Shown here: piece by piece, positions 27,344-55,438 of the stretch
Layout of the letters: the number at the start of each line of letters is the position of its first letter
How positions within the stretch are numbered: the first letter of the stretch is position 1
Virus record (IMG/VR): IMGVR_UViG_3300044701_003160
Span: 62,001-126,000 of that record
Direction: 5' to 3' (one strand)
DNA length: 64,000 nt
The notes under the pieces: model-generated
The model's database searches: none
Seen by the model: the letters and a program-made list of their open reading frames with translations, nothing else
Told to the model about the DNA's origin: nothing
Translations under genes and position numbers: made by a program

Positions 27344-27386
27344 TATGGTATTTAAACTTTTAACTATTTATAAAATATTAAACTCC

Positions 27387-27424
27387 ATTATAACACAAAA
27401 AAAGAGACCCGTAAAGGGTCTCTA
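27387..27424 (-). terminator. psbA terminator overlapping a promoter
   Basis: GAGACCC-tttac-GGGTCTC-T7; TTTACG-N17-TATAAT. Confidence 0.75.
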
Positions 27425-27430
27425 ATTTTA

Positions 27431-28947
27431 TCAACCGATTGAAGGAGCAGTGAGAGCAACTGGTGTTGCTTCTGCTGCTGCAAGGTCAAGTGGGAAGTTG
27501 TGCTTACAGTTTGGACTATATCTTCACCATACTCTTTATGAGGTTAGGTGTCGGACGCTATTGGTGTATTACATCTCACGCTTGAGAAACCACCTAGTCT
27601 CTGAACCTTCCAATCAAGTTCGTGATTGGCTTGGCTGCTGATTGCCCGTTAGGGTTTCCAGCAATTCATCCGAAGTTTATCTTACCTTTTCAGATAAGAG
27701 CGCCCACAAATCGAGCGTTGCGTTCATGCATGACTTCCATTCCAAGTCCTGCACGATTTAGGACATCTGCCCAAGTGTTAATAACTTTACCTTGACTATC
27801 AACGATAGACTGGTTGAAGTTGAAACCGTTGCACTGAACCCATAAGTTTACCATTCTTATGGAGTGGACTATATCTTCATCCATTTAGGATGTTGGGCGC
27901 TATTGGTGTATTACATCTCACGCTTGAGAAACCACCTAGTCTCTGAACCTTTCCAAGAAGCGTCTTGGACTTGGCTGCTGATTACCCAATATGGAGGGCT
28001 TCCAGCAATTCACCCAATGTTTACCGTCAAATTGCTAGGACGGGACCCCGACGATTGAGGTTAAATGCCATCGTAGAAACACCAAGAGCAGTGAACCAGA
28101 TGCCTACAACAGGCCAGGCAGCCAGGAAGAAGTGCAGTGAACGGGAGTTATTAAAGGAAGCATATTGAAAAATAAGGCGTCCAAAATACCCGTGAGCAGC
28201 AACGATGTTGTAGGTCTCTTCTTCTTGACCGAACTTATATCCGTAGTTCTGTGACTCATTCTCAGTAGTTTCACGAACCAGTGAAGAAGTCACCAGTGAA
28301 CCGTGCATAGCACTGAAGAGTGAACCACCGAACACACCAGCAACTCCAAGCATGTGGAAGGGGTGCATCAGGATATTGTGTTCTGCTTGGAAGACAAGCA
28401 TATAGTTAAACGTACCAGAGATACCAAGAGGCATCGCATCAGAGAAAGAACCTTGACCGAAAGGATAAACCAGGAATACGGCAGAAGCAGCAGCAACAGG
28501 TGCGCTGTAAGCAACACAGATCCAAGGACGCATACCTAGACGGTAAGAGAGTTCCCATTCACGTCCCATATAAGCATAGATGCCGATGAGGAAGTGAAAT
28601 ACAACGAGTTGGAAAGGTCCACCGTTATAAAGCCATTCATCAAGAGAAGCAGCTTCCCAGATAGGATAGAAGTGAAGTCCGATAGCATTAGAAGAAGGAA
28701 CAACGGCACCAGAGATGATGTTGTTTCCGTACATTAGAGAACCAGCAACTGGTTCACGAATGCCGTCGATGTCCACTGGGGGAGCACCAACGAAAGCGAT
28801 AATGAAGCAAGTCGTAGCAGCAAGCAGGCAAGGAATCATCAGGACTCCGAACCAACCAACATACAGACGATTGTTAGTGGAAGTAACCCACTCACAGAAT
28901 TGGTTCCAGGTATTTGTGGAACGTTGTTGAGCAATTGTAGCAGTCAT
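27431..28947 (-). CDS. psbA: Photosystem II D1 protein, three exons (28058-28947, 27714-27831, 27431-27502)
   Basis: Joined exons give 1080 nt = 359 aa + stop, restoring ...[12 protein letters not shown]...[14 protein letters not shown]... Confidence 0.97.
27503..27713 (-). mobile_element. Group I intron 2 of psbA (211 nt, no ORF), after codon A336
   Basis: 5' exon ends in U, intron ends in G; core elements TCAGAGACTA and AAGATATAGTCC; guide UUUGUGGGCG pairs exon 2 end and exon 3 start (CACAA). Confidence 0.93.
27832..28057 (-). mobile_element. Group I intron 1 of psbA (226 nt, no ORF), within codon L297
   Basis: Exon ...AACCU / intron ...CAGUG / exon CAACGG restores frame; core AGAGACTA and AAGATATAGTCC; guide GGGGU pairs ACCU. 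Confidence 0.9.
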
Positions 28948-28949
28948 TT

Positions 28950-29070
28950 GTTTTAAAAGGGTAAGTATGATTCAGGGGGACTGAATGGTTACAAGTATTC
29001 CCACGACACCCTCCATCGTGGGTATGAGGGATGCTTTACTTCTCGTGATCCCGGTTGGAGAAGATTCCGT
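28950..29070 (-). ncRNA. Structured psbA 5' leader (PhotoRC-II-like RNA motif)
   Basis: Hairpins CTTCTC/GAGAAG, CCCACGA/TCGTGGG and ATTCAG/CTGAAT between promoter and psbA ATG; family name from recall. Confidence 0.6.
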
Positions 29071-29112
29071 AGGTAAGAAATTGTTACATTCCTTAACCCC
29101 GTGTATGTATAT

Positions 29113-29141
29113 ATAATAGCACTGTCAGGAAATGCTGTCAA
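29113..29141 (-). promoter_or_regulatory. psbA sigma70-type promoter
   Basis: TTGACA(29136-29141)-N17-TATTAT(29113-29118). Confidence 0.8.
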
Positions 29142-29183
29142 TAGGTCCAATTACCTAGGTGGCACAAGATAAATAAGAACCTT

Positions 29184-30434
29184 TTAGTAAATCTCTCTCC
29201 ATCTCATAGATACTCCAACATTACTAGGATCTGTTCCAATATTACTTACACGAACTGAAAAGATTTCTGAGTCTGTCGAATCAAAATTTTGTGTTAGATA
29301 ATTCTTTTTAGATGTTGGGCCTGATTGGGCAACAGTAGTTGTTGCTGATGGTTTTGTTACATTTTGACTGTCTCCTGCAGCATAACCACCCATAAAATCT
29401 TCAAAATATGTGGTGCTAATTCCAGTAGCACTTTCATTAAATTCAACAACAGATTCTGTATTTTCAGAAACCCAAGTTCCTGTCGTATTAATTCCAGTTG
29501 AACTTCGTAATTTTACAACTTCATATTTTACATTTGCCCCACTACTAAACACAGAGACATCTTCAAGTTTTACTGTTGCTCTATTTGGATATCCCTTAAA
29601 TGAATTCTTAAGTCTAATTGCAATAATTGGAACTGTAGTGCCTACACCAACAGTTCTAAGATTTGTTGTATGTGAAAATTCTCTTCCTGCCTCTGTATAT
29701 CCACCTTCACTCATTACACTAGAACAAATTTGAATAAAAGAACCTCCAGCACCTACTTGTGTTCCTACATTTCTAACCTCACATCTTACTGGAAGATTTG
29801 GATTAGACATATAAACTGTTGGGATATGATTTGAATTATAAAATTCGTGACAAACAACATTCTTACCATCGATTGAAAATCCGCAACGAACTCTACCAAC
29901 ACCTAACCATTCAAAGTCAGTAAAGAACAATTGAGTTTTGGTAATATCTAATGTAAATCCAGAAGGGTCTTGTCCTGTTAATCTATCTTTGTTCCATTGA
30001 GACTGAGTAACTCTTCTATCTGAAGCAATTCCAGTTACATAAGACCTAATTACGAAACTTAAAGTTCCATCTGGTGCTTGCTCAAAGAAAATTCCATCCC
30101 TATCATCAAAGTATCCAGTTCTCTTATAGACATTTTGCTGTGCCGTACCAAAATTAAATGTTGAGAAAATCAATTGAGATTTACCAGGCATATAATGATG
30201 ATATCTCTTTGTCTGGTGAATAGTATATCCATCAGTACTGATACCAGAACTTAAAATTGCTGCAGCTTGATTTACATCAAAAGTTACAGTTGCGCCAGTA
30301 CCTACCTTTACATCTATAAAGTCTGGGTCAATAGAATAAAGGTGCTTATAATCTCCAAGAGTAAATGGTTCTGATACCCTTAATCTTCCAAAAGCGTCAT
30401 CTCCGGGTTTCCACGGATCATATAAGTGTGACAT
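29184..30434 (-). CDS. Putative virion structural protein (beta-rich)
   Basis: DAFGRLRVSEP..., YHHYMPGKSQ, WLGVGRVRCGF; Thr/Ser/Gly-rich. Confidence 0.55.
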   Translation of the reverse strand: MSHLYDPWKPGDDAFGRLRVSEPFTLGDYKHLYSIDPDFIDVKVGTGATVTFDVNQAAAILSSGISTDGYTIHQTKRYHHYMPGKSQLIFSTFNFGTAQQNVYKRTGYFDDRDGIFFEQAPDGTLSFVIRSYVTGIASDRRVTQSQWNKDRLTGQDPSGFTLDITKTQLFFTDFEWLGVGRVRCGFSIDGKNVVCHEFYNSNHIPTVYMSNPNLPVRCEVRNVGTQVGAGGSFIQICSSVMSEGGYTEAGREFSHTTNLRTVGVGTTVPIIAIRLKNSFKGYPNRATVKLEDVSVFSSGANVKYEVVKLRSSTGINTTGTWVSENTESVVEFNESATGISTTYFEDFMGGYAAGDSQNVTKPSATTTVAQSGPTSKKNYLTQNFDSTDSEIFSVRVSNIGTDPSNVGVSMRWREIY

Positions 30435-31267
30435 TAGACTACCCTCCAACCATTTCTATAAACAAAAGTAAGTGACCCATAATCATAAGCAATAATTGCT
30501 CTGTCTCTACCATCAATAGTATCAGAACCAGATGGGAGAATTGTGATATATCTATTAACTCCTCTGGATGCTTCTCCAAGTTCATCTTTTACTATGTAGG
30601 TCTTTCCATCCTTCCTTGGTGTTGGAAGAGTGATTGTAACTGCTCCTGCATAATTAACACCAATATAATAATCTTGTGGAGTTATTGTATACGATGAAGT
30701 GGTGATATATGTAAGAGGCATATCCATATATGCCAGATTTGTCTCACCACCTCCACCTAATGTGGAAAGTTGTTGCTGTATTCTATTGAGAAACAGATTG
30801 TAATGTTTCTGTAAATCTTCAATTGTTGCAAACTTCTGATCTAAAGGAGCTAATGGATCTTGTTGAACTTTAGCATCCGATGGTTCTGCAAGAAGACCTA
30901 AAGATTTTTCTATAAGTGTAAGTTCTTTAGGTTTTTCTGAAGATTCTTCTACTATATTATCTACAATTTCCTGAACTTCTTCAATAACTTCTTCTACAAT
31001 TTCTTGTACTTCTTCTATTGGTTTTTCTTTTACTTTATCAGAATACAACCAATTCTCAAATGATTCTAAAGTTTTTTGCTCTTTCTTTTTTTGAATCTTA
31101 TTTTTTTTCTTTAGTGTCGTTACTTCTTCAAATACATTACTTAAATTCAAATCTCCAACAATAGAAGTAAATTCATCCTTCTGTCTTTTTTTCTCAGAAT
31201 TAACCAAAGAAAAAAAATCAGAAAGATTTAAACTATCTTCTATGTCTATAGGTTTCTTAAATTCCAC
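30434..31267 (-). CDS. Putative tail-fibre-associated protein
   Basis: Acidic coiled-coil N-half; C-terminal YYIGVNYAGAVTITLP...TYIVKDE.G...ITI..SGSDTIDG fibre-type module. Confidence 0.55.
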   Translation of the reverse strand: MEFKKPIDIEDSLNLSDFFSLVNSEKKRQKDEFTSIVGDLNLSNVFEEVTTLKKKNKIQKKKEQKTLESFENWLYSDKVKEKPIEEVQEIVEEVIEEVQEIVDNIVEESSEKPKELTLIEKSLGLLAEPSDAKVQQDPLAPLDQKFATIEDLQKHYNLFLNRIQQQLSTLGGGGETNLAYMDMPLTYITTSSYTITPQDYYIGVNYAGAVTITLPTPRKDGKTYIVKDELGEASRGVNRYITILPSGSDTIDGRDRAIIAYDYGSLTFVYRNGWRVV

Positions 31268-31339
31268 TTATAAACTATTAGCATTTCCTATGATAATATT
31301 TATTATATCATAAATATTTCGGTATCACAAAAACCTCAG

Positions 31340-31453
31340 ATGTCTAAGTCAGCAAACAAGGGTAAGAAGGGATCTGCTGGCGGGAAGCAGTCGAAACAAA
31401 ATTCTGGTAATGCGACTGCAAAGAAAGCCAAAAATGGTGGTAAGAAAAAGTGA
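31340..31453 (+). CDS. Small Lys/Gly-rich basic protein (37 aa)
   Basis: MSKSANKGKKGSAGGKQSKQNSGNATAKKAKNGGKKK; ATAAATA upstream. Confidence 0.6.
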   Translation: MSKSANKGKKGSAGGKQSKQNSGNATAKKAKNGGKKK

Positions 31454-31459
31454 GGATGT

Positions 31460-31651
31460 ATGCCACGAGAATGGAATACTCCAAATCGTGAGCCTTGGAA
31501 CGCACCGATACATAATATCCTAAAAGCAATAGACAATCACACTCACGAGTATTTTAAGAGTGGTGATATTTGGCATCTTGAAAAAGCAGATATGTTAAGA
31601 CAATACTTGCACGAATTAAAAACTTGGATTCATAAGACTGAAGGAAGATGA
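31460..31651 (+). CDS. Hypothetical protein
   Basis: 63-aa ORF with GAGG RBS. Confidence 0.65.
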   Translation: MPREWNTPNREPWNAPIHNILKAIDNHTHEYFKSGDIWHLEKADMLRQYLHELKTWIHKTEGR

Positions 31652-32064
31652 TTGAGATCTTGGAAGGCATTAGTATTTTAATTTCTATTGGAAACTCTCT
31701 GAAAGATCTTAAAGATAAATTCTTTAACTCAGAGAGAAGAAAAGAAATATCAGAATGGTTATATGAAATTGGAAGCGTTGTTGAAGACATAGCAATCTCT
31801 TTAGATAAGGGAGAATATCCTCATCAAACTTGTGCGAGAATGGGATATATTGCAGAAACTTTTTCTGATGTTGTTGGAGATGCAATCACCTCAAAGGAAG
31901 AAGAAAAACTAAAATACCTATTATATTCCTCAGTAAATATTGAAAAAACATTTGGAGAATATATGTCTCTTGAAGGATTTGATAAGACTACATATATTCA
32001 AGAACTCTATTCAATATCAGGTTCAATTTTGGGTATTGCAGACACATTAAAATATAAAAAATGA
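31648..32064 (+). CDS. Hypothetical protein
   Basis: 138 aa, ATGA-coupled. Confidence 0.65.
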   Translation: MIEILEGISILISIGNSLKDLKDKFFNSERRKEISEWLYEIGSVVEDIAISLDKGEYPHQTCARMGYIAETFSDVVGDAITSKEEEKLKYLLYSSVNIEKTFGEYMSLEGFDKTTYIQELYSISGSILGIADTLKYKK

Positions 32065-32210
32065 TTCACGATTTTCCTTGGGGAGTAGTAATTATACTTG
32101 GTAGTGGATTGATATTTACTGCTTGGATAATTTACTACATATTAAGAGTAGCATATCTGGAGATGAAAGATGTATCAGTACAAAATCAAGAAGATCAACA
32201 GAGTCATTGA
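32061..32210 (+). CDS. Small membrane protein (49 aa)
   Basis: MIHDFPWGVVIILGSGLIFTAWIIYYILRVAYLE...; ATGA-coupled. Confidence 0.55.
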   Translation: MIHDFPWGVVIILGSGLIFTAWIIYYILRVAYLEMKDVSVQNQEDQQSH

Positions 32211-32508
32211 TGGCGACACAGTTGATCTTGATATTGATTTAGGATTTTGGATTACTGTATCATATAAAGTCAGATTAAAGGATATTGATGCTGCTGAAAC
32301 TAGAACAAAAGATCTAGCAGAAAAAGCAGAAGGTCTAGCAGCAAAAGCATGGCTAGAAAAAGAACTCTCCCGTGAGGGAGAGTGGATTATTGAAACGACA
32401 AAAGAGGACAAGTATGGAAGAATACTTGGAACTCTTTATCTTGTTGGCGATCCTGTCACAGTTAATGAAAGAATGTTGAATGAAGGAATCGCAAAACCTT
32501 ATGTGTAA
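32170..32508 (+). CDS. Thermonuclease (SNase-like) protein
   Basis: RVIDGDTVDLDIDLGF...VRL..IDAAE.R...DKYGRILG...LNEG.A. Confidence 0.85.
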   Translation: MYQYKIKKINRVIDGDTVDLDIDLGFWITVSYKVRLKDIDAAETRTKDLAEKAEGLAAKAWLEKELSREGEWIIETTKEDKYGRILGTLYLVGDPVTVNERMLNEGIAKPYV

Positions 32509-32672
32509 TGAGAAAGAAACTTCTTCCCATTCTCATTCTTCTGAGACTTCTAATAAATGATGGTCTCTTTATGGAAAACCGAAGGACTCAACCTAAACCT
32601 CAACCACCAGAAGTTCGTGCTGCTATTCGTAGAACTTGGAAAAGAGGTAGGAAGTTATTTACGACTCCATAA
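32508..32672 (+). CDS. Small hypothetical protein (54 aa)
   Basis: MRKKLLPILILLRLLINDG...; start overlaps upstream stop. Confidence 0.45.
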   Translation: MRKKLLPILILLRLLINDGLFMENRRTQPKPQPPEVRAAIRRTWKRGRKLFTTP

Positions 32673-33128
32673 AGTACCTTCAGCAACTCTTCTTCTCAAT
32701 AACCCTTTTTCTACTTTAGTTCCAGGATTACGATAAAGTTCTAATGCCCCCGGAACTTTAGACCATTCTTTATTTCTAAGGACTTTTGTTATGGTATTAA
32801 AATTGGGATTCCCATAAAAATCAGCCCCAAGATTATAAGCAAAAGAAAGAAGTGCTCCTTGTTGATTCTCATTCATTTCGTTCCAATAAGGGATTTTTCG
32901 AAGTGAAGGAAGAAACCGATTTTCAAGATCAAATAGCAATAACCTATTTGCATATTCTTGAGTGATTATTTTTCCCATCTTAAAAGCAGATCCATCAAAA
33001 TCCTTCGTACTTCCCCATCCTACTGTGATTGGAAGTTTTCCAGTTAGTGGATCTGGATATGAGTGTAAATGACATCCTTCAAATTCTTTAATTAGAAAGA
33101 CACCACTTTGAGGAATTTGTGATGTCAT
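32655..33128 (-). CDS. GH24 lysozyme (endolysin)
   Basis: IKEFEGC.L.SYPDP..G..PITVGWGST...ALLSFAYNLG...GLLRRR.AE. Confidence 0.9.
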   Translation of the reverse strand: MTSQIPQSGVFLIKEFEGCHLHSYPDPLTGKLPITVGWGSTKDFDGSAFKMGKIITQEYANRLLLFDLENRFLPSLRKIPYWNEMNENQQGALLSFAYNLGADFYGNPNFNTITKVLRNKEWSKVPGALELYRNPGTKVEKGLLRRRVAEGTLWSRK

Positions 33129-33130: not shown

Positions 33131-33835
33131 CTACTTTTTTGCGTAAAAAATTCTACCCCAACCAGTCTTATCCTTATTATTTTCTAACCAACGATACTGA
33201 AGATCGGAACGCTTATAAACCGCACCTTTACCGTTAGTTACTGCACCTGTATATCCATCGTTCAAAGATCCATAGGGGTCATTAATAATATAATCTGTTC
33301 CTTTTTTACCAATTACTACACACATGTGACCGCCAGTAGGAGCAGATAAAGTACCGCGATGAAGAATCCCGATAACAACGGGTCTCCCAGCGGCAAGCTC
33401 ACGATCAAGATCAGCGAAACCAAGATTATACTTAAACTCAGACTTAATTCCATAATCAACAAGAACTTTTGTCTGAACTGAGTGATCAGTCGTATCTCCT
33501 GTTGCGAGAACTTTCTTAAGATAGGCATCGTCGCCCTTTGCTCCTGGAAGTGTTCCTGGTTTGAAGTACTCAAGACACATTGCACAAGAAGAAGAATTGC
33601 AAGTTCTATCTGGTTGAGTATAGTTATCTACCTGAGGAAAATAAGGAACGTTCAGAATTCCTGGTTGGGCTGGGGGTTCTTGTTTGGTTCTGTAGATACT
33701 AACCCAAGTACTGGAGTCATCCATTAACTCGGGTACTTTTGCAAGTAAATCTTTTTCAAGTTGCTCTACTGATGCAACGTGATTTGGATTCTTAGGATCG
33801 TAATGTAAAAAGAAATTGTGAAGATCAATTTGCAT
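33131..33835 (-). CDS. Peptidase C39-like protein
   Basis: LNVPYFPQ.DN...RTCNSSSCAM...GGHM.VVIG...IINDPYG. Confidence 0.8.
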   Translation of the reverse strand: MQIDLHNFFLHYDPKNPNHVASVEQLEKDLLAKVPELMDDSSTWVSIYRTKQEPPAQPGILNVPYFPQVDNYTQPDRTCNSSSCAMCLEYFKPGTLPGAKGDDAYLKKVLATGDTTDHSVQTKVLVDYGIKSEFKYNLGFADLDRELAAGRPVVIGILHRGTLSAPTGGHMCVVIGKKGTDYIINDPYGSLNDGYTGAVTNGKGAVYKRSDLQYRWLENNKDKTGWGRIFYAKK

Positions 33836-33865
33836 ACTTATACTCCTCCAAGATTATCTTATTTA

Positions 33866-34027
33866 TTAACGAGCATACTCATTAATCTTATCGAGTACCA
33901 TATTCAGGTACTGATCTGCAAGCGATTTGGGATCTGAGGTATAACCAATATGTTCGTTTTGTAGTTTCTGCTTTAACTTTAAGACTTGACATTTCATCTC
34001 ATCTTTTGTTAATTGTCCCCTTGGCAT
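33866..34027 (-). CDS. Small hypothetical protein (53 aa)
   Basis: MPRGQLTKDEMKCQVLKLKQKL...; CTAAATA upstream. Confidence 0.55.
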   Translation of the reverse strand: MPRGQLTKDEMKCQVLKLKQKLQNEHIGYTSDPKSLADQYLNMVLDKINEYAR

Positions 34028-49958: not shown

Positions 49959-49981
49959 TTATTGAAAGTATTCTCAATATT

Positions 49982-50020
49982 ATTATACAAAAAAAGTAGA
50001 GTTTAGTCAACTCTACTTTT
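49982..50020 (-). terminator. Terminator/promoter cassette heading the glycan operon
   Basis: GTAGAG-ttgactaaa-CTCTAC-T7; TTGACT-N17-TATAAT. Confidence 0.85.
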
Positions 50021-50077
50021 AGATTACACTAATTTTCTAAAAACTACGCGGTAGTAAGTGCCAAGTAACTAGTATAG

Positions 50078-50590
50078 TCACAATTGATCATTTTTAAGTA
50101 AATATTTTTCCAATAATTCTGGAGAATATTGTTGAGGAGTTTCGATAATTTGTTTTTGTTCTCTTTTTTCTTTTTCTAAAAGATAAACACGATTTCGAAT
50201 TTCTGTTGAAGAATATTGGTGCCTTCGCAAATGATAATAAATTTGAATTCCATTATCAATACAATACTGTTTTCCAGTTACTTCGATATGGCGATATTCT
50301 TCACTTAAGAAACGAATGTGAAATGTTTGTGTCTGAATTAAATTTAACAAATCTGCTTCAGTTTCATACACTAAAATTTCATCAACATATTTACATCCTT
50401 GCAGTTGTACATAGCGTTCATAAGCAGACTGCACTGGTTTATTTTTAATTCCGGGTCGGTCTATCGTAGGATCTATTTGAAGTGCGACTTTCAGATAATC
50501 ACATAGTTCCCTTTCCATTCTAAGCATAGTTACATGCCCAGCATGAAATAAATCAAATGAGCTACAATTAAATCCTATTTTCATATACAA
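50078..50590 (-). CDS. Cytidylyltransferase (TagD / glycerol-3-phosphate CT-like)
   Basis: SSFDLFHAGH (HxGH); ER...L..CKYVDE; YSSTEIR. Confidence 0.88.
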   Translation of the reverse strand: MYMKIGFNCSSFDLFHAGHVTMLRMERELCDYLKVALQIDPTIDRPGIKNKPVQSAYERYVQLQGCKYVDEILVYETEADLLNLIQTQTFHIRFLSEEYRHIEVTGKQYCIDNGIQIYYHLRRHQYSSTEIRNRVYLLEKEKREQKQIIETPQQYSPELLEKYLLKNDQL

Positions 50591-50604
50591 GATGTTTTCA
50601 TACT

Positions 50605-50643
50605 ATTATACAAAAAAAGGAGAGTTTAGTCAACTCTCCTTTA
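50605..50643 (-). terminator. Second near-identical terminator/promoter cassette
   Basis: GGAGAG-ttgactaaa-CTCTCC-T7; TTGACT-N17-TATAAT. Confidence 0.85.
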
Positions 50644-50649
50644 GGGTCT

Positions 50650-50842
50650 TTTAGGCTCGCCACCAATTCTTTGACTGGAAATTGGAAACCAGGCGGGAGT
50701 AAGATCCCATCCGCACCACCAATCCTTGAGAGAGATTGGAAACTCATAATAGGGTCATATTGACTCCACCAGTACTTTTAGAGTCTCTCCGTGACTAAAG
50801 GGGTTCATCACCGACCAGGGCTAGTTTTAAGTCATACCGGGA
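50650..50842 (-). ncRNA. Structured ~190-nt RNA (manA/wcaG-type cyanophage motif candidate)
   Basis: No ORF; hairpins CCAATC/GATTGG, GCGG/CCGC, CCAATT/AATTGG; UGGUG and UGGCG motifs; lies between tRNA region and glycan genes. Confidence 0.6.
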
Positions 50843-51103
50843 CTATTCTTCATCTTCCTCACCATCATCTTTAATGTAACAAGGAACTGTATCTGGATCC
50901 AACCAACGGGCATATTGATGGTCCTCCATAGCAGTCAGACACTGCATTTGATTATCAAAGAGATAGATGTCATTCCATCTTTTTGTATATTCATTTTTCT
51001 TTTGAAGACGGTAATCAGGTTTACCGTTAAGTTCAATAATACCAACCTCAACAAATCGGTATTCTTCACGCTCCAAAAGAACTTTGGGAAGTTGAGTATT
51101 CAT
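50843..51103 (-). CDS. Hypothetical protein
   Basis: 86-aa ORF. Confidence 0.65.
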   Translation of the reverse strand: MNTQLPKVLLEREEYRFVEVGIIELNGKPDYRLQKKNEYTKRWNDIYLFDNQMQCLTAMEDHQYARWLDPDTVPCYIKDDGEEDEE

Positions 51104-51318
51104 TATGCAACTTCTACAGTTTCCAAATCAGCAGAGACATATTCCATAAGAATCTCATAGTCATCAAGAGGATCACCAGAGAATACTACACCTTCGTTCT
51201 CATAATAGCGGCGGACTTTTTTGTAAAGTTTCGGATTCTTTACATCAAGATAGAAATCACCATTCGCAGCAGAACGAAGAGTTTGAACGTCTTTCTTAAA
51301 TTTAGTAGTCAGAGTCAT
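51103..51318 (-). CDS. Hypothetical protein
   Basis: Likely start MTLTTKFKKD; stop overlaps next start. Confidence 0.65.
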   Translation of the reverse strand: MTLTTKFKKDVQTLRSAANGDFYLDVKNPKLYKKVRRYYENEGVVFSGDPLDDYEILMEYVSADLETVEVA

Positions 51319-51394
51319 TTTTTTGTTTGTTGACCTTGTAATTATAAAGGGTTGAAGTTTGAAAGTCAAGAGAGACACTTTGAGAAGTGTCTGA

Positions 51395-51467
51395 TGCTCC
51401 TTGCGTGGATCGAACACGCCTCAGGCGAATTATGAGTTCGCTGCATTCACCAGATTGCTAAAGGAGC
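51395..51467 (-). tRNA. tRNA with CAT anticodon (Ile2 or Met)
   Basis: GCTCCTT/AAGGAGC acceptor; GCGAA-CTCATAA-TTCGC; GTTCGAT T-loop; no encoded CCA. Confidence 0.88.
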
Positions 51468-51468
51468 G

Positions 51469-51882
51469 TTATTCATTTAATTGTCGTCTTTGTTTATGAT
51501 ACCCAACTTTTTTATTTAAAGTTTTATAAGTATCTGTTAAAGTATGACAATTAGGACACAAAACTCTTAAATTTTCTTTGTATCCATTTTCTCTTGATCC
51601 ATCTATGTGATCTATTTCAAGATAGATAATACCGTTTGTTGGATTTGGTTTTCCCCATCCACATTCGGAACACTTATATCCTGCCTCTTCAAGCATAAAT
51701 CTTCTAACAAAATCACTTGGTCTTCCATCTCTAACTTTGCCAGTTATTTTTTTAGATAACCAATCAGATATATTTTGTTTATAATAATCTTCTTGTTGGC
51801 ATTTATTAGAGCAGTAAATACCTTTTCCTTGTGAAGGAGAATACTTAAAGTTTTTTTTGCAGTTTTTACAAGTTCCTATCAT
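51469..51882 (-). CDS. HNH endonuclease
   Basis: CxxC...YCSNKC; CSECG...EIDHIDG...N.KENLRVLCPNCH. Confidence 0.9.
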   Translation of the reverse strand: MIGTCKNCKKNFKYSPSQGKGIYCSNKCQQEDYYKQNISDWLSKKITGKVRDGRPSDFVRRFMLEEAGYKCSECGWGKPNPTNGIIYLEIDHIDGSRENGYKENLRVLCPNCHTLTDTYKTLNKKVGYHKQRRQLNE

Positions 51883-51936
51883 CGATGTTAGACCACTCTA
51901 CACTTTTATTTATACTCTAAGTGTAGTTTAGAGTAA

Positions 51937-52024
51937 TACGAGTGCCTGGATTCGAACCAGGTCAAAGCCGCTAATCTGGCGGAAAGAGTTTATAAGACTC
52001 CTCTGACTACCAAGTCTCACTCGC
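51937..52024 (-). tRNA. tRNA-Ile(TAT) with long variable arm
   Basis: GCGAGTG/CACTCGT; GGAGT-CTTATAA-ACTCT; variable hairpin CCGC/GCGG; 88 nt. Confidence 0.8.
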
Positions 52025-52063
52025 ATAAAACCAAATCTATAATAGCGGATCTGGAACGCTTCG

Positions 52064-52291
52064 TCAAGACCCTTCTTCGTGATCGGTATGAATTTTGACT
52101 ATCTCCTCAAAATCCACATTTGACTCTTCACATATACTAACCACATCTTTATAAGGAACCATTACAGCATTTCCGTGTTTGCTAGTAATAAGAAATGATT
52201 CACCATTCTCAACTCTATTCATTAGAGCATCAAAGTCTGATTGAAATTCTTCGATTGTAAATGATTGAAGTTGGTTTAGTTCTTGATTCAT
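52064..52291 (-). CDS. Phd/YefM antitoxin-like protein
   Basis: FTIEEFQSDFDALMNRVENGESFLIT.KHGNAVMVPY fits the Phd N-terminal pattern. Confidence 0.55.
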   Translation of the reverse strand: MNQELNQLQSFTIEEFQSDFDALMNRVENGESFLITSKHGNAVMVPYKDVVSICEESNVDFEEIVKIHTDHEEGS

Positions 52292-52314
52292 TTTTATAAT
52301 ATAAAGATTATAAG

Positions 52315-52388
52315 TCGGGACGATAGGATTTGAACCTACGGCCTGACGCTCCCAAAGCGCCTGCTCTACCAAACTGAGCTACGTCCCG
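52315..52388 (-). tRNA. tRNA-Pro(TGG)
   Basis: CGGGACG/CGTCCCG; anticodon loop TTTGGGA. Confidence 0.95.
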
Positions 52389-52412
52389 ATTTCTTTGTGT
52401 ATCCTATCAGGT

Positions 52413-52571
52413 TTATCGAACCCTGTCAACCACCTGAAGAACACCGTGAGCATAAAAGAAAAGGAGTACTGAACCGATTGTTGCTGATATTATTGTAGCA
52501 GTTTTATTGTGCCTGTCAATGGCTTTTGCAACTGACTGGTCGATCATTTCTTGAACTTCTTCAGGTGTCAT
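52413..52571 (-). CDS. Small membrane protein (52 aa)
   Basis: MTPEEVQEMIDQSVAKAIDRHNK...IGSVLLFFYAHGVL. Confidence 0.55.
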   Translation of the reverse strand: MTPEEVQEMIDQSVAKAIDRHNKTATIISATIGSVLLFFYAHGVLQVVDRVR

Positions 52572-52716
52572 TTTTATTACCAAGAAATTTTGCCAGAGGA
52601 TCTCTTTTTGTTCTAATTATTTCACACGCTCTTTTATAAAACATATTATCAGTATTACCTGATGATTCAAACGTTTCCTTTATTTTAACCCAATTTTGGT
52701 ATGTGTGATCATCCAT
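52561..52716 (-). CDS. Small hypothetical protein (51 aa)
   Basis: MDDHTYQNWVKIKETFESSGNTDNMFYKRACEI... Confidence 0.6.
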   Translation of the reverse strand: MDDHTYQNWVKIKETFESSGNTDNMFYKRACEIIRTKRDPLAKFLGNKNDT

Positions 52717-52803
52717 TTGGGATCTATACGTTATTATTACTAATTTAGTTTAATTAACAATCTTATTTTGTCAAGTATGTGTGGATATCATCATAATTTT
52801 AAA

Positions 52804-52888
52804 CGGTGAGGAAAGGATTCGAACCTTCGGATGCTTTCACATCGACTGTTTTCAAGACAGTTGCCTTAAACCACTCGGCCACCTCACC
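52804..52888 (-). tRNA. tRNA-Ser(TGA)
   Basis: GGTGAGG/CCTCACC; ACTGT-CTTGAAA-ACAGT; long variable arm. Confidence 0.95.
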
Positions 52889-53243
52889 ATATTATTTCCA
52901 ATAAACCAGCGTGTATTTTACGATGACACGGAGAACAGAGCATATAACATTTATCTATTTCTGTTTGGATTGTCTCCCATTTGTATCCTTTTCCCGCTAA
53001 GTAAGAAACTTCCTTTTTCTTATTTTCTGCCTCAATATGATGAAAATCAAAACAACAGGGAGGATGGTAATCTCCACAAGCATCACAACAACCTTTTTCA
53101 AGTTTTAATTGATTTAGTTTTTCAACCATCAACTTTTTATTATTATATTCTCTTTGGTATTTAATTTTTTTAAATTCTCCAGATTGTTTTTGAGCCCAAA
53201 GACGTTGTGCTTCTTTTTGCTTTTCTTTATCTTTATAAGGCAT
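52884..53243 (-). CDS. HNH endonuclease
   Basis: CDACG..HPPCCFDFHH...EIDKCYMLCSPCHRKIH; stop overlaps tRNA-Ser 5' end. Confidence 0.85.
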   Translation of the reverse strand: MPYKDKEKQKEAQRLWAQKQSGEFKKIKYQREYNNKKLMVEKLNQLKLEKGCCDACGDYHPPCCFDFHHIEAENKKKEVSYLAGKGYKWETIQTEIDKCYMLCSPCHRKIHAGLLEIIW

Positions 53244-53284
53244 ATCATTTAAAAGGTTCTAATTTATTTATAAAAAATTAGAAC

Positions 53285-53536
53285 TTAACGGACTTCGAAA
53301 TCAAGACGCCTCACTTTTCTTTGGCGTCTTTGTTCTTGCCAGGCAATATCCTGGGAGGTTAACACGTTTGTTTTTGGTGTTTCCTTTAATGAGTTTAGCA
53401 TTACAATACGGGATAAGTCAACTGCCGAAATCTTATCTCCTCTAATTGTTGCCATATTGGGACATCCACAACTAATAGTTTTTGAAGAGTGCCCCACTAA
53501 TTCTTTACTGCAATCTTTGCATCTTATTGATATCAT
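53285..53536 (-). CDS. Hypothetical Zn-ribbon protein
   Basis: CKDC...CGCPN. Confidence 0.65.
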   Translation of the reverse strand: MISIRCKDCSKELVGHSSKTISCGCPNMATIRGDKISAVDLSRIVMLNSLKETPKTNVLTSQDIAWQEQRRQRKVRRLDFEVR

Positions 53537-53551
53537 TTTTTGTTACCGTAA

Positions 53552-53986
53552 TCACTGTAAATGTGCTCTTAATTGCCAAACAAATTTTCCGTGAGATTCC
53601 ATCAAATCTTGAACTAGATTGGCAGTTGCATAAGATTTTTGAGTTTCAGACTCTTCCGAAATTTCACCCATTAACTCACAAAATTTAGTATTGTTATCCA
53701 AAAGTTCTTGAAGCATCTCTTTTGCTCCCGTAGAACTTGTTGCTTCTTTGATTTGAGTTACTTCAAGCATTCTTGAAAGAGAACTTAAAGGTTTTACATT
53801 TAAGTATCTCATATGTTCGGAGAGCCTGTCAATCTCTTCAAACATCGTTTCATATTGTCCACCAAACAGTTGATGAAGTTGAGTAAAGTCTTCACCTACA
53901 ACATTCCAGTGAAATGCCCAGGTTTTATGGAACAAAACAAAAAGTGATGACTGAGCATCACTGAGTAATTTATAAAGTTTTTCCAT
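53552..53986 (-). CDS. dps: Dps/ferritin-like DNA-protection protein
   Basis: KTWAFHWNVVG.DF.QLH.LF..QY...EIDRLSEH ferroxidase pattern. Confidence 0.9.
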   Translation of the reverse strand: MEKLYKLLSDAQSSLFVLFHKTWAFHWNVVGEDFTQLHQLFGGQYETMFEEIDRLSEHMRYLNVKPLSSLSRMLEVTQIKEATSSTGAKEMLQELLDNNTKFCELMGEISEESETQKSYATANLVQDLMESHGKFVWQLRAHLQ

Positions 53987-54014
53987 TATACTTTTTTTCA
54001 AGTATTTATGCAAA

Positions 54015-54087
54015 TGGGAGCAGAGGGATTCGAACCCCCGACATTCTGCGTGTAAAGCAGACGCTGCTACCGCTGAGCTATGCTCCC
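54015..54087 (-). tRNA. tRNA-Val(TAC)
   Basis: GGGAGCA/TGCTCCC; TCTGC-TTTACAC-GCAGA. Confidence 0.95.
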
Positions 54088-54090
54088 TTG

Positions 54091-54162
54091 TCCTCTGTCT
54101 GGGAATCGAACCCAGTATCCGTGTGTGTTGTCCACCCGTCCTTACCAATAGACTACCAGAGG
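54091..54162 (-). ncRNA. tRNA-like element with non-canonical anticodon arm
   Basis: CCTCTG/CAGAGG acceptor, GTCT..TGGTAA..GGAC D-arm, CTGGG-TTCGATT-CCCAG T-arm; anticodon arm GGTGG-ACAACAC-ACACG lacks U33 and pairs poorly. Confidence 0.7.
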
Positions 54163-54164
54163 TA

Positions 54165-54236
54165 CTCCACAACCTGGATTCGAACCAGGGACCAATCGAT
54201 TAACAGTCGATGGCTCTACCGCTGAGCTATTGTGGA
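54165..54236 (-). tRNA. tRNA-Asn(GTT)
   Basis: TCCACAA/TTGTGGA; ATCGA-CTGTTAA-TCGAT. Confidence 0.95.
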
Positions 54237-54244
54237 ATGTTCTA

Positions 54245-54448
54245 CTACTTAGAACTTACAAAATCATTAATCGTTTCTGCTTGCTTAAGAACATCCTGTA
54301 GAGTTGGAAACTCTGGATAATCCATCTTCACAGTATTTGAAGAATTTAGATTCCAATAACGAGCAGTATCCATTTCAGTACTGAACTGATCATTTAGCAT
54401 ATTATATGCTTGCTTGAAGATTTCAAAACGAAGTTCGTAAGGTGTCAT
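54245..54448 (-). CDS. Hypothetical protein
   Basis: MTPYELRFEIFKQA...AETINDFVS; GGAG RBS. Confidence 0.7.
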   Translation of the reverse strand: MTPYELRFEIFKQAYNMLNDQFSTEMDTARYWNLNSSNTVKMDYPEFPTLQDVLKQAETINDFVSSK

Positions 54449-54495
54449 TTATTTACTCCCGTGTGTTTGTGTGTTTAAAGAACCTGAAGGTTCAG

Positions 54496-54566
54496 AGCGA
54501 GTGACGGGGATCGAACCCGTGACAAGAGCTTGGAAGGCTCGCATGTTACCGCTACACCACACTCGC
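54496..54566 (-). tRNA. tRNA-Gly(TCC)
   Basis: GCGAGTG/CACTCGC; anticodon loop CTTCCAA; own promoter TTGACA-N17-TATGAT (54576-54604). Confidence 0.95.
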
Positions 54567-54605
54567 AATAAGACAATCATAAGGTATAAAACCCAGATTG
54601 TCAAG

Positions 54606-54687
54606 TGCCCAAAAGAGGACTTGAACCTCCACAGATAAATCTACAGGAACCTAAACCCTGCGCGTCTACCAATTCCGCCATTTGGGC
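54606..54687 (-). tRNA. tRNA-Leu(TAG)
   Basis: GCCCAAA/TTTGGGC; CAGGG-TTTAGGT-TCCTG; variable arm. Confidence 0.93.
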
Positions 54688-54690
54688 GGA

Positions 54691-54763
54691 TGGAGAATAG
54701 GAGACTCGAACTCCTGACACCCGCCTTGCAAAGGCCGCGCTCTACCAACTGAGCTAATTCCCC
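54691..54763 (-). tRNA. tRNA-Ala(TGC)
   Basis: GGGGAAT/ATTCTCC with G3:U70; loop TTTGCAA. Confidence 0.93.
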
Positions 54764-54840
54764 AAGATGGAGTAAGTGTGATATACCTCATAAGGATATA
54801 ACAGTGACTTACCCTCTATCACTTTTATATATTACACCAG

Positions 54841-55392
54841 TTATTCGATGGTGTCAAGTCTTAATTTAGAGTGTATCTCTCTGTGACAATTAGAACAAAC
54901 ACATATACATTTGTCAAGTTCCTTTTTTTGGTCTTCCCATTTTCGTATTTTAATGTTACCAAAGTTTTTATCTTTTTGTGATGGGTCTATATGATGAAAC
55001 TCTAAAGCATCGATACACTTATCATATCCGCACCTCTCACATTTTCCACCTTTATAATCAACTGCTCTTTTTTTATTATTTTGCCACCTTTCTACAGAAT
55101 ATTTGTTGTGGCATTTTTTACAATTTGCTTGCCATATTTTTTTACTTTCACGCCAATATCCAGTTTTTTCTGTCAAAAGAACTTTACATTTAGAGCAATT
55201 TTGAATTGGTTTACCATCTACTTTTAAAATTGGATTTAAAATATATCCATCTTTAAATGTTTTATGTTTTGTTTTTAATTGATATTTGTCTAACCAATAC
55301 CTAACAGTGGTTTTTCCTTTACTTTCAAGTTTAGATATTTGTGAGGTTGACATTCCATCTTCAATATATTCTATTAATTTTTGTTTATCCAT
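54841..55392 (-). CDS. HNH endonuclease with N-terminal HTH
   Basis: YKGGKCERCGY.KC..ALEFHH.DP...ELDKC..VCSNCHREIH; contains TTGACA-N17-TAATAT promoter (54829-54857) for downstream tRNAs. Confidence 0.9.
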   Translation of the reverse strand: MDKQKLIEYIEDGMSTSQISKLESKGKTTVRYWLDKYQLKTKHKTFKDGYILNPILKVDGKPIQNCSKCKVLLTEKTGYWRESKKIWQANCKKCHNKYSVERWQNNKKRAVDYKGGKCERCGYDKCIDALEFHHIDPSQKDKNFGNIKIRKWEDQKKELDKCICVCSNCHREIHSKLRLDTIE

Positions 55393-55438
55393 TAGTCCAA
55401 AGGAAATATATTATTATTTATACAATTGAACTATTTAA

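What the first reader, a model, noticed from the sequence alone, without database searches (positions are those of the whole stretch)
27345..55433. Four endonuclease genes share a hairpin leader with the late promoter in the loop
Seen: TATAAATA lies in the loop of an inverted repeat just upstream of each gene. HNH 52884: GTTCTAATTT/AAATTAGAAC (53256-53284, 10 bp). HNH 51469: CTACACTT/AAGTGTAG (51898-51926). HNH 54841: TAGTTCAA/TTGGACTA (55393-55433, 3' arm covers GGA next to the ATG). EndoVII: ATGG-A-GTTTAA/TTAAAT-A-CCAT (27345-27388). Known: T4 I-TevI-type genes are silenced on early transcripts by an RBS-occluding hairpin and expressed from a late promoter inside it. Inference: unrelated nuclease families converged on the same delay switch here.
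Basis: partly seen in the sequence, partly recalled or inferred. Interest (0 to 1): 0.65.

Follow-up and report, generated by a model that had tools for sequence, protein, structure and literature searches.

The report
Promoter-in-hairpin leaders on phage endonuclease genes
In this T4-like cyanophage, four mobile-type endonuclease genes each carry a T4 late-promoter box inside a small hairpin that ends at or near the start codon; this looks like a conserved cyanophage version of a trick already known from phage T4, not a new kind of system.

Summary
All four inverted repeats and TATAAATA boxes sit at the stated coordinates, on the minus strand, 15-24 nt upstream of the four start codons.

Taken alone the hairpins are weak: -7.5 to -13.4 kcal/mol, and only two of four reach z below -2.7. 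Relatives in viral metagenome contigs and in two cultured cyanophages (DSL-LC02, S-RIM50) keep the same layout, often with stronger stems of -14 to -19 kcal/mol.
- One family shows covarying stem pairs.
- Some relatives use entirely different stem sequences.
- One subset has a perfect sigma-70 promoter in the same hairpin in place of the late box.

The best explanation is the known T4 switch (I-TevI, segB, mobE, genes e, soc, 49). Read-through transcripts, here from tRNA operons and psbA, fold the start region shut. Transcripts that start inside the hairpin lack the 5' arm and are translated.

Three limits apply:
- No RNA data exist for this phage.
- Start-site occlusion is geometrically convincing for only two of the four genes.
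- Five other nuclease-like genes with TATAAATA in this genome lack the enclosing hairpin.

"Unrelated families converged" is overstated: all four are His-Me-finger nucleases and two are paralogs. TATAAATA-bearing hairpins upstream of free-standing endonuclease genes in marine metagenomes were published in 2009. Verdict: new members of a known kind.

The parts
27345..27388 (-). Leader hairpin of the F-CphI/EndoVII-type endonuclease gene. TATAAATA at 27365-27372 lies in the loop. The 3' arm ends 1 nt before the ATG.
   Evidence: minimum free energy -10.8 kcal/mol, z -3.22. Conserved in 11 of 14 distinct relatives' leaders. One relative reaches -17.1 kcal/mol, z -5.45.
27403..27423 (-). Intrinsic terminator (8-bp GC-rich stem plus T run) after psbA exon 3, about 15 nt upstream of the hairpin.
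   Evidence: Conserved in relatives.
26819..27343 (-). 174-aa endonuclease with the Endonuclease_7 motif at residues 94-171; an F-CphI-like free-standing homing endonuclease lying directly after psbA.
   Evidence: Pfam PF02945, 77 bits. 38.7% identity to S-PM2 F-CphI. It is the only match to T4 gp49 in the genome.
51892..51937 (-). Leader of HNH 51469. TATAAATA is at 51907-51914.
Evidence: minimum free energy -13.4 kcal/mol, z -1.73.
51469..51882 (-). 137-aa HNH endonuclease gene between tRNA-Ile(tat) (51936-52025) and tRNA-Met (51395-51467).
   Evidence: Pfam PF01844 and PHROG HNH families; tRNAs.
53256..53284 (-). Leader hairpin of HNH 52884: 10-bp perfect stem, TATAAATA at 53265-53272, 3' arm ending 12 nt before the ATG.
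   Evidence: -8.2 kcal/mol, z -2.79. The stem covaries among relatives. An identical hairpin occurs in cultured phage DSL-LC02.
52884..53243 (-). 119-aa HNH endonuclease gene. Its 3' end overlaps tRNA-Ser (52803-52889).
   Evidence: PHROG 3106/2255 HNH families; weak PF01844 match; tRNA.
55393..55433 (-). Leader hairpin of HNH 54841: 8-bp stem with one G.U and a 25-nt loop holding TATAAATA at 55415-55422. The 3' arm abuts the ATG and the 5' arm starts 4 nt after tRNA-Arg.
   Evidence: -7.5 kcal/mol, z -1.05. Kept in 11 of 15 distinct relatives' leaders, always abutting the ATG. One relative reaches -13.7 kcal/mol, z -3.71.
54841..55392 (-). 183-aa HNH endonuclease gene with an N-terminal helix-turn-helix; paralog of HNH 52884.
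55600..55628 (-). Sigma-70-like promoter (10 of 12 consensus positions) upstream of tRNA-Arg (55438-55512). The predicted source of read-through transcripts into HNH 54841.
   Evidence: No terminator-like site lies between it and the ORF.
52039..52067 (-). Sigma-70-like promoter (10 of 12 consensus positions) upstream of tRNA-Ile. The predicted source of read-through transcripts into HNH 51469 and on to tRNA-Met.

Best explanation
Each of the four genes is a free-standing, homing-type endonuclease cassette that carries its own promoter inside a leader hairpin.

On transcripts that start upstream, both arms are present and the hairpin folds over or next to the start codon, which hinders 30S binding. 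For the three HNH genes these are tRNA-operon transcripts driven by sigma-70-like promoters. For the F-CphI-like gene they are read-through transcripts past the psbA terminator.

Transcription from the TATAAATA box in the loop would begin about 6 nt downstream of it. That gives a 16-19-nt leader without the 5' arm, so the start region is open and the nuclease is made. The box is presumably read by host RNA polymerase carrying the phage gp55 homolog, late in infection.

Shown here: the anatomy, its conservation and partial covariation, and the presence of gp55 and of NATAAATA at structural genes. Inferred: the start sites, the timing and the translational effect.
For: **Anatomy and geometry**
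- Anatomy is as described.
- By position, predicted late start sites fall inside or just before the 3' arm in all four leaders (about one helical turn from box to start site in T4, PMC2988020).
- Predicted cost of opening -15..+5 around the ATG falls from 9.2 to 0.8 kcal/mol (EndoVII-type), 8.3 to 2.9 (HNH 54841), 6.6 to 1.6 (HNH 52884) and 5.4 to 3.8 (HNH 51469) when the read-through leader is replaced by the late leader.

**Conservation in relatives**
- The HNH-54841 family sits behind two different tRNAs, with the 3' arm always abutting the ATG.
- The HNH-52884 family keeps the GGTTC/GAACC base and shows four different, fully complementary inner stems.
  - 67 of 78 cells are paired against a shuffle mean of 54.1 +/- 2.3; 0 of 5000 shuffles reach the observed value.
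  - Covariation score is 0.150 against 0.086; 2 of 500 shuffles reach it.
- S-RIM50 gp014 is 35% identical in protein and has an unrelated 9-bp stem plus an outer stem. Together they give -19 kcal/mol (z -4.9); the box is in the loop and the 3' strand abuts the AUG.
- Contig L103 has a 13-bp perfect stem abutting the ATG.
- About 10 relatives of HNH 52884 have a perfect TTGACA-17-TATAAT promoter in the same hairpin, with the -10 hexamer in the loop.

**RNA rather than DNA**
- Non-Watson-Crick positions are G.U on the sense strand rather than A.C: 12:2 in the HNH-54841 family and 6:1 in the EndoVII-type family.

**Context**
- A gp55 homolog is present and NATAAATA precedes structural genes.
- Downstream tRNAs abut or overlap the HNH ORF ends, with no strong promoter in between for tRNA-Ser and tRNA-Met. 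Transcripts must therefore cross the HNH ORFs.

**Precedent**
- T4 I-TevI/II/III, segB and Aeh1 mobE, plus late genes such as soc and e (PMC2988022).
- TATAAATA-bearing hairpins upstream of GIY-YIG and Vsr-like endonuclease genes in marine metagenome loci (PMC2677866).
Against: - No RNA data: no public run holding this stretch is recorded as RNA.
- The window's own hairpins are weak. Predicted start-site opening energies on long transcripts are only at the 86th, 81st, 65th and 47th percentile of 192 genes.
- There is no clear Shine-Dalgarno sequence to occlude.
- Formal covariation in the HNH-54841 family is not above shuffles.
- G.U versus A.C asymmetry is absent in the HNH-52884 family (7:8).
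- A terminator already precedes the EndoVII-type hairpin.
- Five other nuclease-like genes with TATAAATA lack an enclosing hairpin; all nine nuclease-like genes against the non-nuclease leaders give p = 0.21.
- S-PM2 F-CphI has terminator plus TATAAATA but no enclosing hairpin.
- The sigma-70 variants mean that timing need not be late.
Confidence: 0.6

Rival explanations
1. The inverted repeat is a DNA operator. The endonuclease itself or another dimeric protein binds the palindrome around the promoter and represses it, as I-TevI does at an operator that overlaps its late promoter.
For: - The GGTTC/GAACC base of the HNH-52884 family hairpin is invariant in sequence, not merely in pairing.
- Its 5' arm resembles the tRNA T-arm/loop consensus, and all three HNH families sit next to tRNA genes, which are plausible cleavage targets.
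- I-TevI autorepression is documented (PMC2988022).
- There is no G.U versus A.C strand bias in that family (7:8).
Against: - Inner stem pairs change on both sides while staying complementary.
- Homologs use unrelated stem sequences.
- G.U on the sense strand is favoured in two families, 12:2 and 6:1.
- The 3' arm tracks the start codon in many relatives. An operator has no need to do that.
Confidence: 0.12
2. The hairpins are composite promoter/stem-loop punctuation, like PeSL cassettes. They would act as weak terminators or insulators, RNA-processing or stability elements, or recombination hot spots that move the cassettes, with no role in translation.
For: - Several other TATAAATA boxes in this genome, and the one at S-PM2 F-CphI, sit directly after terminator hairpins.
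- PeSLs are known in T4-like phages (PMC2839356, PMC4122927).
- The cassettes occur in different genomic contexts.
- The hairpin of HNH 51469 does not reach the start region.
Against: - The stems are AT-rich and not followed by a conserved U tract.
- The promoter lies inside the loop, not after the stem.
- In most relatives the 3' arm abuts or covers the AUG.
- Stems of 8-13 bp are too short for typical RNase III sites (general knowledge).
Confidence: 0.13
3. The window's four hairpins are chance features of AT-rich leaders, noticed because the reader looked for them, or decaying remnants that no longer function.
For: - Two of the four are not significant on their own: z -1.05 and -1.73.
- 11% of other genes have a comparable hairpin near the start.
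- Opening energies are unexceptional.
- Some relatives have degraded stems: L023, L026, L028, L128, L138 and L148.
Against: - The four rank 1, 2, 4 and 8 of 44 promoter-bearing leaders.
- The architecture is conserved, with compensatory changes, and is stronger in relatives, where z runs from -3.7 to -5.5 with 0 of 200 shuffles reaching the observed energy.
Confidence: 0.1

Closest known systems
T4-even homing endonuclease leaders (I-TevI, I-TevII, I-TevIII, segB, Aeh1 mobE); review PMC2988022
   Same: - A late or middle promoter is placed so that its transcripts lack part of a hairpin which, on longer early transcripts, sequesters the translation start.
- The scheme applies to both GIY-YIG and HNH enzymes.
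- The free-standing endonuclease segB is among the hairpin-regulated cases. By recollection, not checked here, it lies in the T4 tRNA cluster, as the three HNH genes do here.
   Different: - The T4 hairpins are described as very stable and occlude a consensus Shine-Dalgarno sequence. Here the stems are 8-10 bp and AT-rich, no Shine-Dalgarno sequence is evident, and two of four 3' arms stop 12-15 nt short of the ATG.
- Start sites are mapped in T4 and unmapped here.
- The host is a cyanobacterium.
T4 late genes embedded in early regions (e, soc, gene 49 endonuclease VII)
   Same: The same hairpin and late-promoter logic applies to non-mobile genes. Gene 49 carries the EndoVII motif that the 26819-27343 ORF shares (34% identity over 93 aa). 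The T4 gene 49 leader read here has the late-type box just before a hairpin that ends at the ATG.
   Different: - The cyanophage ORF is the F-CphI-type homing endonuclease next to psbA, not an evident packaging resolvase.
- In T4 gene 49 the box lies 5' of the stem rather than in the loop.
- The review text prints gene '39' where its reference list has Barth et al. 1988 on gene 49. That gene 49 is regulated in this way is my recollection of that paper.
Hairpins with TATAAATA upstream of free-standing GIY-YIG and Vsr-like endonucleases in marine metagenome 'fractured gene' loci (Dassa et al. 2009, PMC2677866)
   Same: - Hairpins occur in 15 of 16 endonuclease 5' UTRs, and 10 of them contain TATAAATA.
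- Conserved motifs pair on the stem.
- The authors interpret them as mobE-like translational control.
- The sequences come from marine and estuarine phage-like DNA.
   Different: - Different endonuclease families (GIY-YIG and Vsr-like, against HNH and F-CphI here).
- Different insertion sites (split replication genes, against tRNA clusters and psbA here).
- No promoter-class swap was reported.
S-PM2 F-CphI / psbA / CfrI antisense RNA locus
   Same: The endonuclease family is the same and it sits immediately after an intron-containing psbA, with a terminator and then TATAAATA before the ORF.
   Different: - S-PM2 has no hairpin enclosing the box.
- Whether a CfrI-like antisense RNA exists here is unknown.
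- psbA here has two group I introns.
PeSL promoter/stem-loop cassettes of T4-like phages (PMC2839356, PMC4122927)
   Same: Small composite promoter-plus-stem-loop modules that flank accessory genes in plastic genome regions.
   Different: A PeSL is a terminator stem-loop joined to an early promoter. Here the stem encloses the -10 element and lacks terminator features.

Membership tests
T4-type promoter-in-hairpin translational switch | The promoter is positioned so that its transcript starts inside the hairpin and lacks the 5' arm. | tested here: met
   By position only. TATAAATA lies in the loop of all four hairpins, so a start about 6 nt downstream falls in or just before the 3' arm. Start sites are not mapped.
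T4-type promoter-in-hairpin translational switch | [quoted passage not shown] | tested here: inconclusive
   The 3' arm ends 1 nt (27345 leader) and 0 nt (55393 leader) before the ATG, but 12 nt (53256) and 15 nt (51898) before it in the other two. There is no clear Shine-Dalgarno sequence. Opening energies are 9.2, 8.3, 6.6 and 5.4 kcal/mol, at the 86th, 81st, 65th and 47th percentile of genes. Relatives often pair the AUG flank.
T4-type promoter-in-hairpin translational switch | The gene lies within a longer early or middle transcription unit. | tested here: inconclusive
   Sigma-70-like promoters lie upstream of tRNA-Arg and tRNA-Ile, with no terminator before the HNH ORFs, and downstream tRNAs abut the ORF ends. 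The EndoVII-type gene is preceded by a terminator. These are predictions only; no RNA data exist.
T4-type promoter-in-hairpin translational switch | The late transcription machinery (gp55) is present and the box is used at late genes. | tested here: met
   A gp55 homolog is found at E 7e-17. NATAAATA lies 16-38 nt upstream of the portal, sheath, sheath-stabilizer, baseplate and scaffold genes.
T4-type promoter-in-hairpin translational switch | Translation is delayed relative to transcription, and the delay is relieved by removing the 5' arm. | not testable with these tools
   Needs reporter or toeprint experiments.
Free-standing homing endonuclease cassette | A nuclease domain of a known homing endonuclease family. 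| tested here: met
   PF01844 or PHROG HNH families for the three HNH ORFs. PF02945 plus similarity to F-CphI for the fourth.
Free-standing homing endonuclease cassette | Sporadic distribution, with different genomic neighbours in related phages. | tested here: met
   The HNH-54841 family is found behind two different tRNAs. The HNH-52884 family is found behind a small ORF or behind several different tRNAs. Presence and absence at one fixed site was not examined.
Free-standing homing endonuclease cassette | Site-specific cleavage of the endonuclease-lacking allele, followed by gene conversion. | not testable with these tools
   Biochemical and genetic tests are needed.
F-CphI family (EndoVII-motif homing endonuclease) | A C-terminal EndoVII catalytic motif and a position next to psbA. 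| tested here: met
   PF02945 at residues 94-171. 38.7% identity to S-PM2 F-CphI over 142 aa. The ORF starts 88 nt after psbA exon 3, and psbA carries two group I introns.
Intrinsic terminator / PeSL | A GC-rich stem followed by a U tract (for a PeSL, joined to an early promoter). | tested here: not met
   None of the four hairpins is called by the terminator scan. The stems are AT-rich and downstream U runs are not conserved.
Any Rfam family | A match to a curated covariance model. | tested here: not met
   No Rfam hit overlaps any of the four leaders at E <= 0.1.

The most novel reading that the evidence does not exclude
The hairpin may be a portable read-through insulator that travels with the endonuclease cassette, rather than a late timer as such. 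On this reading it makes translation depend only on the cassette's own promoter, whatever that promoter is.

What the evidence shows:
- In the HNH-52884 family the same hairpin scaffold, in the same genomic context, holds either a late TATAAATA box or a perfect sigma-70 promoter.
- In this genome the exact T4 consensus box is disproportionately a property of nuclease cassettes (9 of 19 TATAAATA-led ORFs), while structural genes mostly use A/C-ATAAATA.

A further possibility is that the T-arm-like 5' arm doubles as an operator that mimics the tRNA-gene target.
Probability: 0.25. Interest if true: 0.55.

Novelty: new member of a known kind. Interest (0 to 1): 0.35.

Why it matters
- It extends a classic T4 regulatory device to HNH and F-CphI-type endonuclease cassettes of cyanophages, including those lodged in tRNA clusters and beside the photosynthesis gene psbA.
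- It helps explain how selfish nuclease genes can sit inside operons that must be transcribed early, here tRNAs and psbA, without being expressed at the wrong time.
- It gives annotators a simple signature, a promoter box in a hairpin that ends at the ATG, for finding mobile endonuclease cassettes and their own promoters in metagenomic phage contigs.
- It points to two cultured phages, S-RIM50 and DSL-LC02, in which the model can be tested.

Tried and rejected
- **RNA evidence.** The run search found only DNA-type metagenome holders and none recorded as RNA.
- **Syn9 transcriptome paper.** Doron et al. 2016 is not held in the library. My statement that T4-like late boxes are used by cyanophages therefore rests on this genome's own pattern and on my recollection.
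- **Covariation in the HNH-54841 family.** It is not above shuffles, so I rely on conservation there.
- **MAFFT alignments A1 and A3 of the HNH-52884 leaders.** They put the 5' arms out of register. I replaced them with hairpin-only alignment A4 and a base-anchored count.
- **"All nuclease genes in this genome have the hairpin."** Rejected: nine nuclease-like genes against non-nuclease leaders give p = 0.21.
- **The SegE_GIY-YIG gene (57933-58370) as a fifth conserved case.** Rejected: its relatives have the box inside the upstream coding sequence and no hairpin.
- **Terminator reading of the hairpins.** Rejected.
- **Known RNA family.** Rejected.
I reran it from locus references.
- **Not used, because not needed:** the large protein searches, structure prediction and complex prediction.

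Full report
**Source and setting.** The window is bases 62001-126000 of a 219,018-bp, 35.7% G+C virus record. It has the features of a T4-like cyanomyovirus:
- Its tRNAs match Synechococcus phages.
- It encodes two photosystem reaction-centre genes, of which I read the split one as psbA and the second as psbD. It also encodes portal, sheath and baseplate genes and a homolog of the T4 late sigma factor gp55 (E 7e-17).

All four genes of the finding are on the minus strand:
- ORF 26819-27343 has an EndoVII motif (PF02945, 77 bits).
- ORFs 51469-51882, 52884-53243 and 54841-55392 are HNH endonucleases.
- The three HNH genes lie inside an 11-gene tRNA cluster.

| Leader (window coordinates) | Stem | 3' arm to ATG | Min. 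free energy, kcal/mol | z (shuffles as good) | Fixed-box shuffles matching the stem |
|---|---|---|---|---|---|
| 27345-27388 | 4+6 bp, one A.A mismatch, one G.U | 1 nt | -10.8 | -3.22 (2/200) | 1.0% |
| 51898-51926 | 8 bp perfect | 15 nt | -13.4 | -1.73 (16/200) | 3.3% |
| 53256-53284 | 10 bp perfect | 12 nt | -8.2 | -2.79 (3/200) | 2.3% |
| 55393-55433 | 8 bp, one G.U | 0 nt | -7.5 | -1.05 (32/200) | 15.7% |

Two other helices compete with it. One of them, 51925-51937 with 51892-51904, also encloses the box.
- Across all 44 NATAAATA-led leaders of the genome the four rank 1, 2, 4 and 8 (Mann-Whitney p = 0.0014).
- A comparable hairpin near the start codon occurs at 25 of 231 other genes.

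On this genome alone the evidence is therefore moderate.

**The promoter box.**
- The genome holds only 21 exact TATAAATA sites, and 19 of them lie 15-38 nt upstream of an ORF start.
- Variants with A or C in the first position lie 16-33 nt upstream of the portal, tail sheath, sheath stabilizer and baseplate wedge genes. The exact box precedes the scaffold gene. Together with gp55, this makes NATAAATA a credible late promoter here.
- Nine of the 19 TATAAATA-led ORFs are nuclease-like:
  - a second endonuclease downstream of the second Photo_RC gene (25019-25594);
  - a SegE_GIY-YIG protein (57933-58370);
  - a GIY-YIG homing endonuclease, a further HNH, and another homing-endonuclease-like ORF elsewhere in the genome.
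- A tenth nuclease, HNH 22513-22875, has TCTAAATA instead.
Several of the others have the box placed directly after a terminator hairpin.

**Relatives.** I fetched loci encoding relatives of each protein from viral metagenome contigs and read their leaders.
- *HNH-54841 family (67-85% protein identity).*
  - The gene always follows a tRNA, of two different kinds.
  - 11 of 15 distinct leaders keep the hairpin, with the box in the loop and the 3' arm abutting the ATG.
  - One relative folds at -13.7 kcal/mol, z -3.7.
  - Formal covariation is not above shuffles.
  - The non-Watson-Crick cells are G.U on the sense strand 12 times and A.C twice.
- *EndoVII-type family.*
  - 11 of 14 distinct leaders keep the hairpin.
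  - Changes are G.U to G-C in some leaders and, in one, the A.A mismatch replaced by a U-A pair. That leader folds at -17.1 kcal/mol, z -5.45.
  - G.U against A.C is 6:1.
- *HNH-52884 family.* This is the most informative family.
  - The GGTTC/GAACC base is invariant.
  - The inner stem occurs in four different, fully complementary versions.
  - 67 of 78 cells are paired against a shuffle mean of 54.1 +/- 2.3, and 0 of 5000 shuffles reach the observed value.
  - On alignment A4 the covariation score is 0.150 against 0.086 (2 of 500 shuffles), with four pairs changed on both sides.
- *Promoter swap.* About ten relatives in the same genomic context carry a perfect TTGACA-17-TATAAT promoter in place of the late box. 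The -10 hexamer lies in the loop of the same scaffold.
- *Cultured phages.* DSL-LC02 has an identical hairpin. S-RIM50 gp014 is 35% identical in protein and has an unrelated 9-bp stem plus an outer stem. Together they fold at -19 kcal/mol (z -4.9), with the box in the loop and the 3' strand abutting the AUG.
- *HNH-51469 family.* One contig (L103) has a different 13-bp perfect stem abutting the ATG, at -15.6 kcal/mol, z -4.5.

The architecture is therefore maintained across sequence turnover. This is the strongest evidence that it is functional.

**Context that creates the need for such a switch.**
- Sigma-70-like promoters lie on the minus strand upstream of tRNA-Arg (55600-55628) and tRNA-Ile (52039-52067). 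No terminator-like site separates them from the HNH ORFs.
- The next tRNAs abut or overlap the ends of the HNH ORFs: tRNA-Ser overlaps 52884-52889, and tRNA-Met starts 2 nt after 51469. No strong promoter precedes them.
- Transcripts that make those tRNAs must therefore cross the nuclease ORFs. This is inference.
- The EndoVII-type ORF follows psbA exon 3 and an intrinsic terminator (27403-27423). Any read-through from psbA, expected to be highly expressed, would enter it.

**Mechanism and its limits.** A late start about 6 nt after the box would give 16-19-nt leaders that lack the 5' arm (positions; box-to-start spacing from PMC2988020). The predicted cost of opening positions -15 to +5 then changes as follows:

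| Gene | Read-through leader, kcal/mol | Late leader, kcal/mol | Percentile of the read-through value among 192 genes |
|---|---|---|---|
| EndoVII-type (26819-27343) | 9.2 | 0.8 | 86th |
| HNH 54841 | 8.3 | 2.9 | 81st |
| HNH 52884 | 6.6 | 1.6 | 65th |
| HNH 51469 | 5.4 | 3.8 | 47th |

The read-through values are unremarkable against the background of genes, and there is no clear Shine-Dalgarno sequence. I rate the occlusion claim as follows:
- good for two genes (EndoVII-type and HNH 54841);
- plausible for HNH 52884;
- unsupported for HNH 51469 in this genome.

No run recorded as RNA holds this stretch, so start sites, timing and translational effect remain inferred.

**Comparison with what is known.**
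- The review of T4 mobile elements (PMC2988022) describes exactly this device for I-TevI, I-TevII, I-TevIII, segB and Aeh1 mobE. It notes the same logic for late genes such as soc and e, and its reference list cites Barth et al. 1988 on gene 49.
- The T4 gene 49 leader, read here, has the late-type box just 5' of a hairpin that ends at the ATG.
- Dassa et al. 2009 (PMC2677866) reported hairpins in 15 of 16 leaders of free-standing GIY-YIG and Vsr-like endonucleases in marine metagenome loci. Ten of them contained TATAAATA.
- The "EndoVII" ORF is best matched among cultured phages by S-PM2 F-CphI, the characterised homing endonuclease next to psbA (PMC6083498). S-PM2 itself has terminator plus box but no enclosing hairpin.
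- HNH 52884 and HNH 54841 are paralogs (E 4e-14). EndoVII and HNH share the His-Me-finger catalytic fold (general knowledge). "Unrelated families converged" is therefore overstated for these four genes, although the literature shows the device across truly different nuclease folds.

**Verdict.** The feature is real and conserved, and is best read as new cyanophage members of a known regulatory kind. Three aspects seem not to have been described before:
- its presence on HNH cassettes in cyanophage tRNA clusters and on an F-CphI-type gene;
- the late/sigma-70 promoter swap inside one hairpin scaffold;
- the concentration of the exact T4 consensus box at nuclease cassettes.

Noticed in passing
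window 27431-28947 (-), with 27491-27723, 27840-28067 and 28987-29076: psbA is split by two group I introns (Rfam RF00028, 77.6 and 84.8 bits) and is preceded by a PhotoRC-II RNA motif (49.5 bits). The F-CphI-like endonuclease follows directly. After it come a second Photo_RC gene (psbD-like, 25696-26757) and another endonuclease (25019-25594) with its own TATAAATA at 25610.
   Followed up: partly
whole genome (G000); window sites 25610, 27365, 51907, 53265, 55415, 58397: Nine of the 19 ORFs led by an exact TATAAATA are nuclease-like, whereas structural late genes mostly use AATAAATA or CATAAATA. The exact T4 consensus box looks like a mark of mobile nuclease cassettes in this phage.
   Followed up: partly
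loci L047, L049, L053, L055, L062, L064, L067, L068, L070 (about 45 nt upstream of the HNH start): Relatives of HNH 52884 carry a perfect or near-perfect TTGACA-17-TATAAT promoter in the same GGTTC...GAACC hairpin scaffold that holds TATAAATA in the window. The promoter class has been swapped within one leader.
   Followed up: partly
window 53256-53284 and relatives (alignment A4): The 5' arm of the HNH-52884 family hairpin (GGTTC, then T/G/A, then AAT, and so on) resembles the tRNA T-arm/loop consensus. All three HNH families sit beside tRNA genes. This could be an operator or target mimic, or a coincidence.
   Followed up: no
window 33836-33878 (-), upstream of ORF 33131-33835: An endolysin-like gene has AATAAATA inside a weak hairpin whose 3' arm contains GGAGGAG. 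The layout is reminiscent of T4 lysozyme gene e, but the fold is not significant (z -1.36).
   Followed up: partly
window 58375-58410 (-), upstream of ORF 57933-58370: A SegE_GIY-YIG-domain gene (PF19835, 183 bits) has TATAAATA in the 5' arm of a -12.8 kcal/mol hairpin (z -2.93). Relatives lack this hairpin and have the box inside the upstream coding sequence.
   Followed up: yes
window 50649-50747 (-) and 55519-55555 (-): A wcaG RNA motif (RF01761, 98 bits), and an abiF RNA motif (RF03085, 44.9 bits, above the gathering score) lying between a sigma-70-like promoter and tRNA-Arg.
   Followed up: no
window 51936-52025 (-): ARAGORN calls a 90-nt tRNA-Ile(tat) here, but the Rfam tRNA model gives no hit at E <= 0.1. 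It may be an unusual or interrupted tRNA. The leader of HNH 51469 starts at its 3' end.
   Followed up: no
window 54829-54857 (-): A sigma-70-like promoter (TTGACA-17-TAATAT) lies inside the 3' end of HNH 54841, upstream of tRNA-Ala. This resembles the embedded promoters described for T4 seg and mob genes.
   Followed up: no
window 27387-27415 (-): A conserved TATAAT hexamer with a TG extension abuts the 5' arm of the EndoVII-type hairpin, and its -35 region falls in the terminator. It is a possible additional promoter whose transcripts would carry only part of the 5' arm.
   Followed up: no
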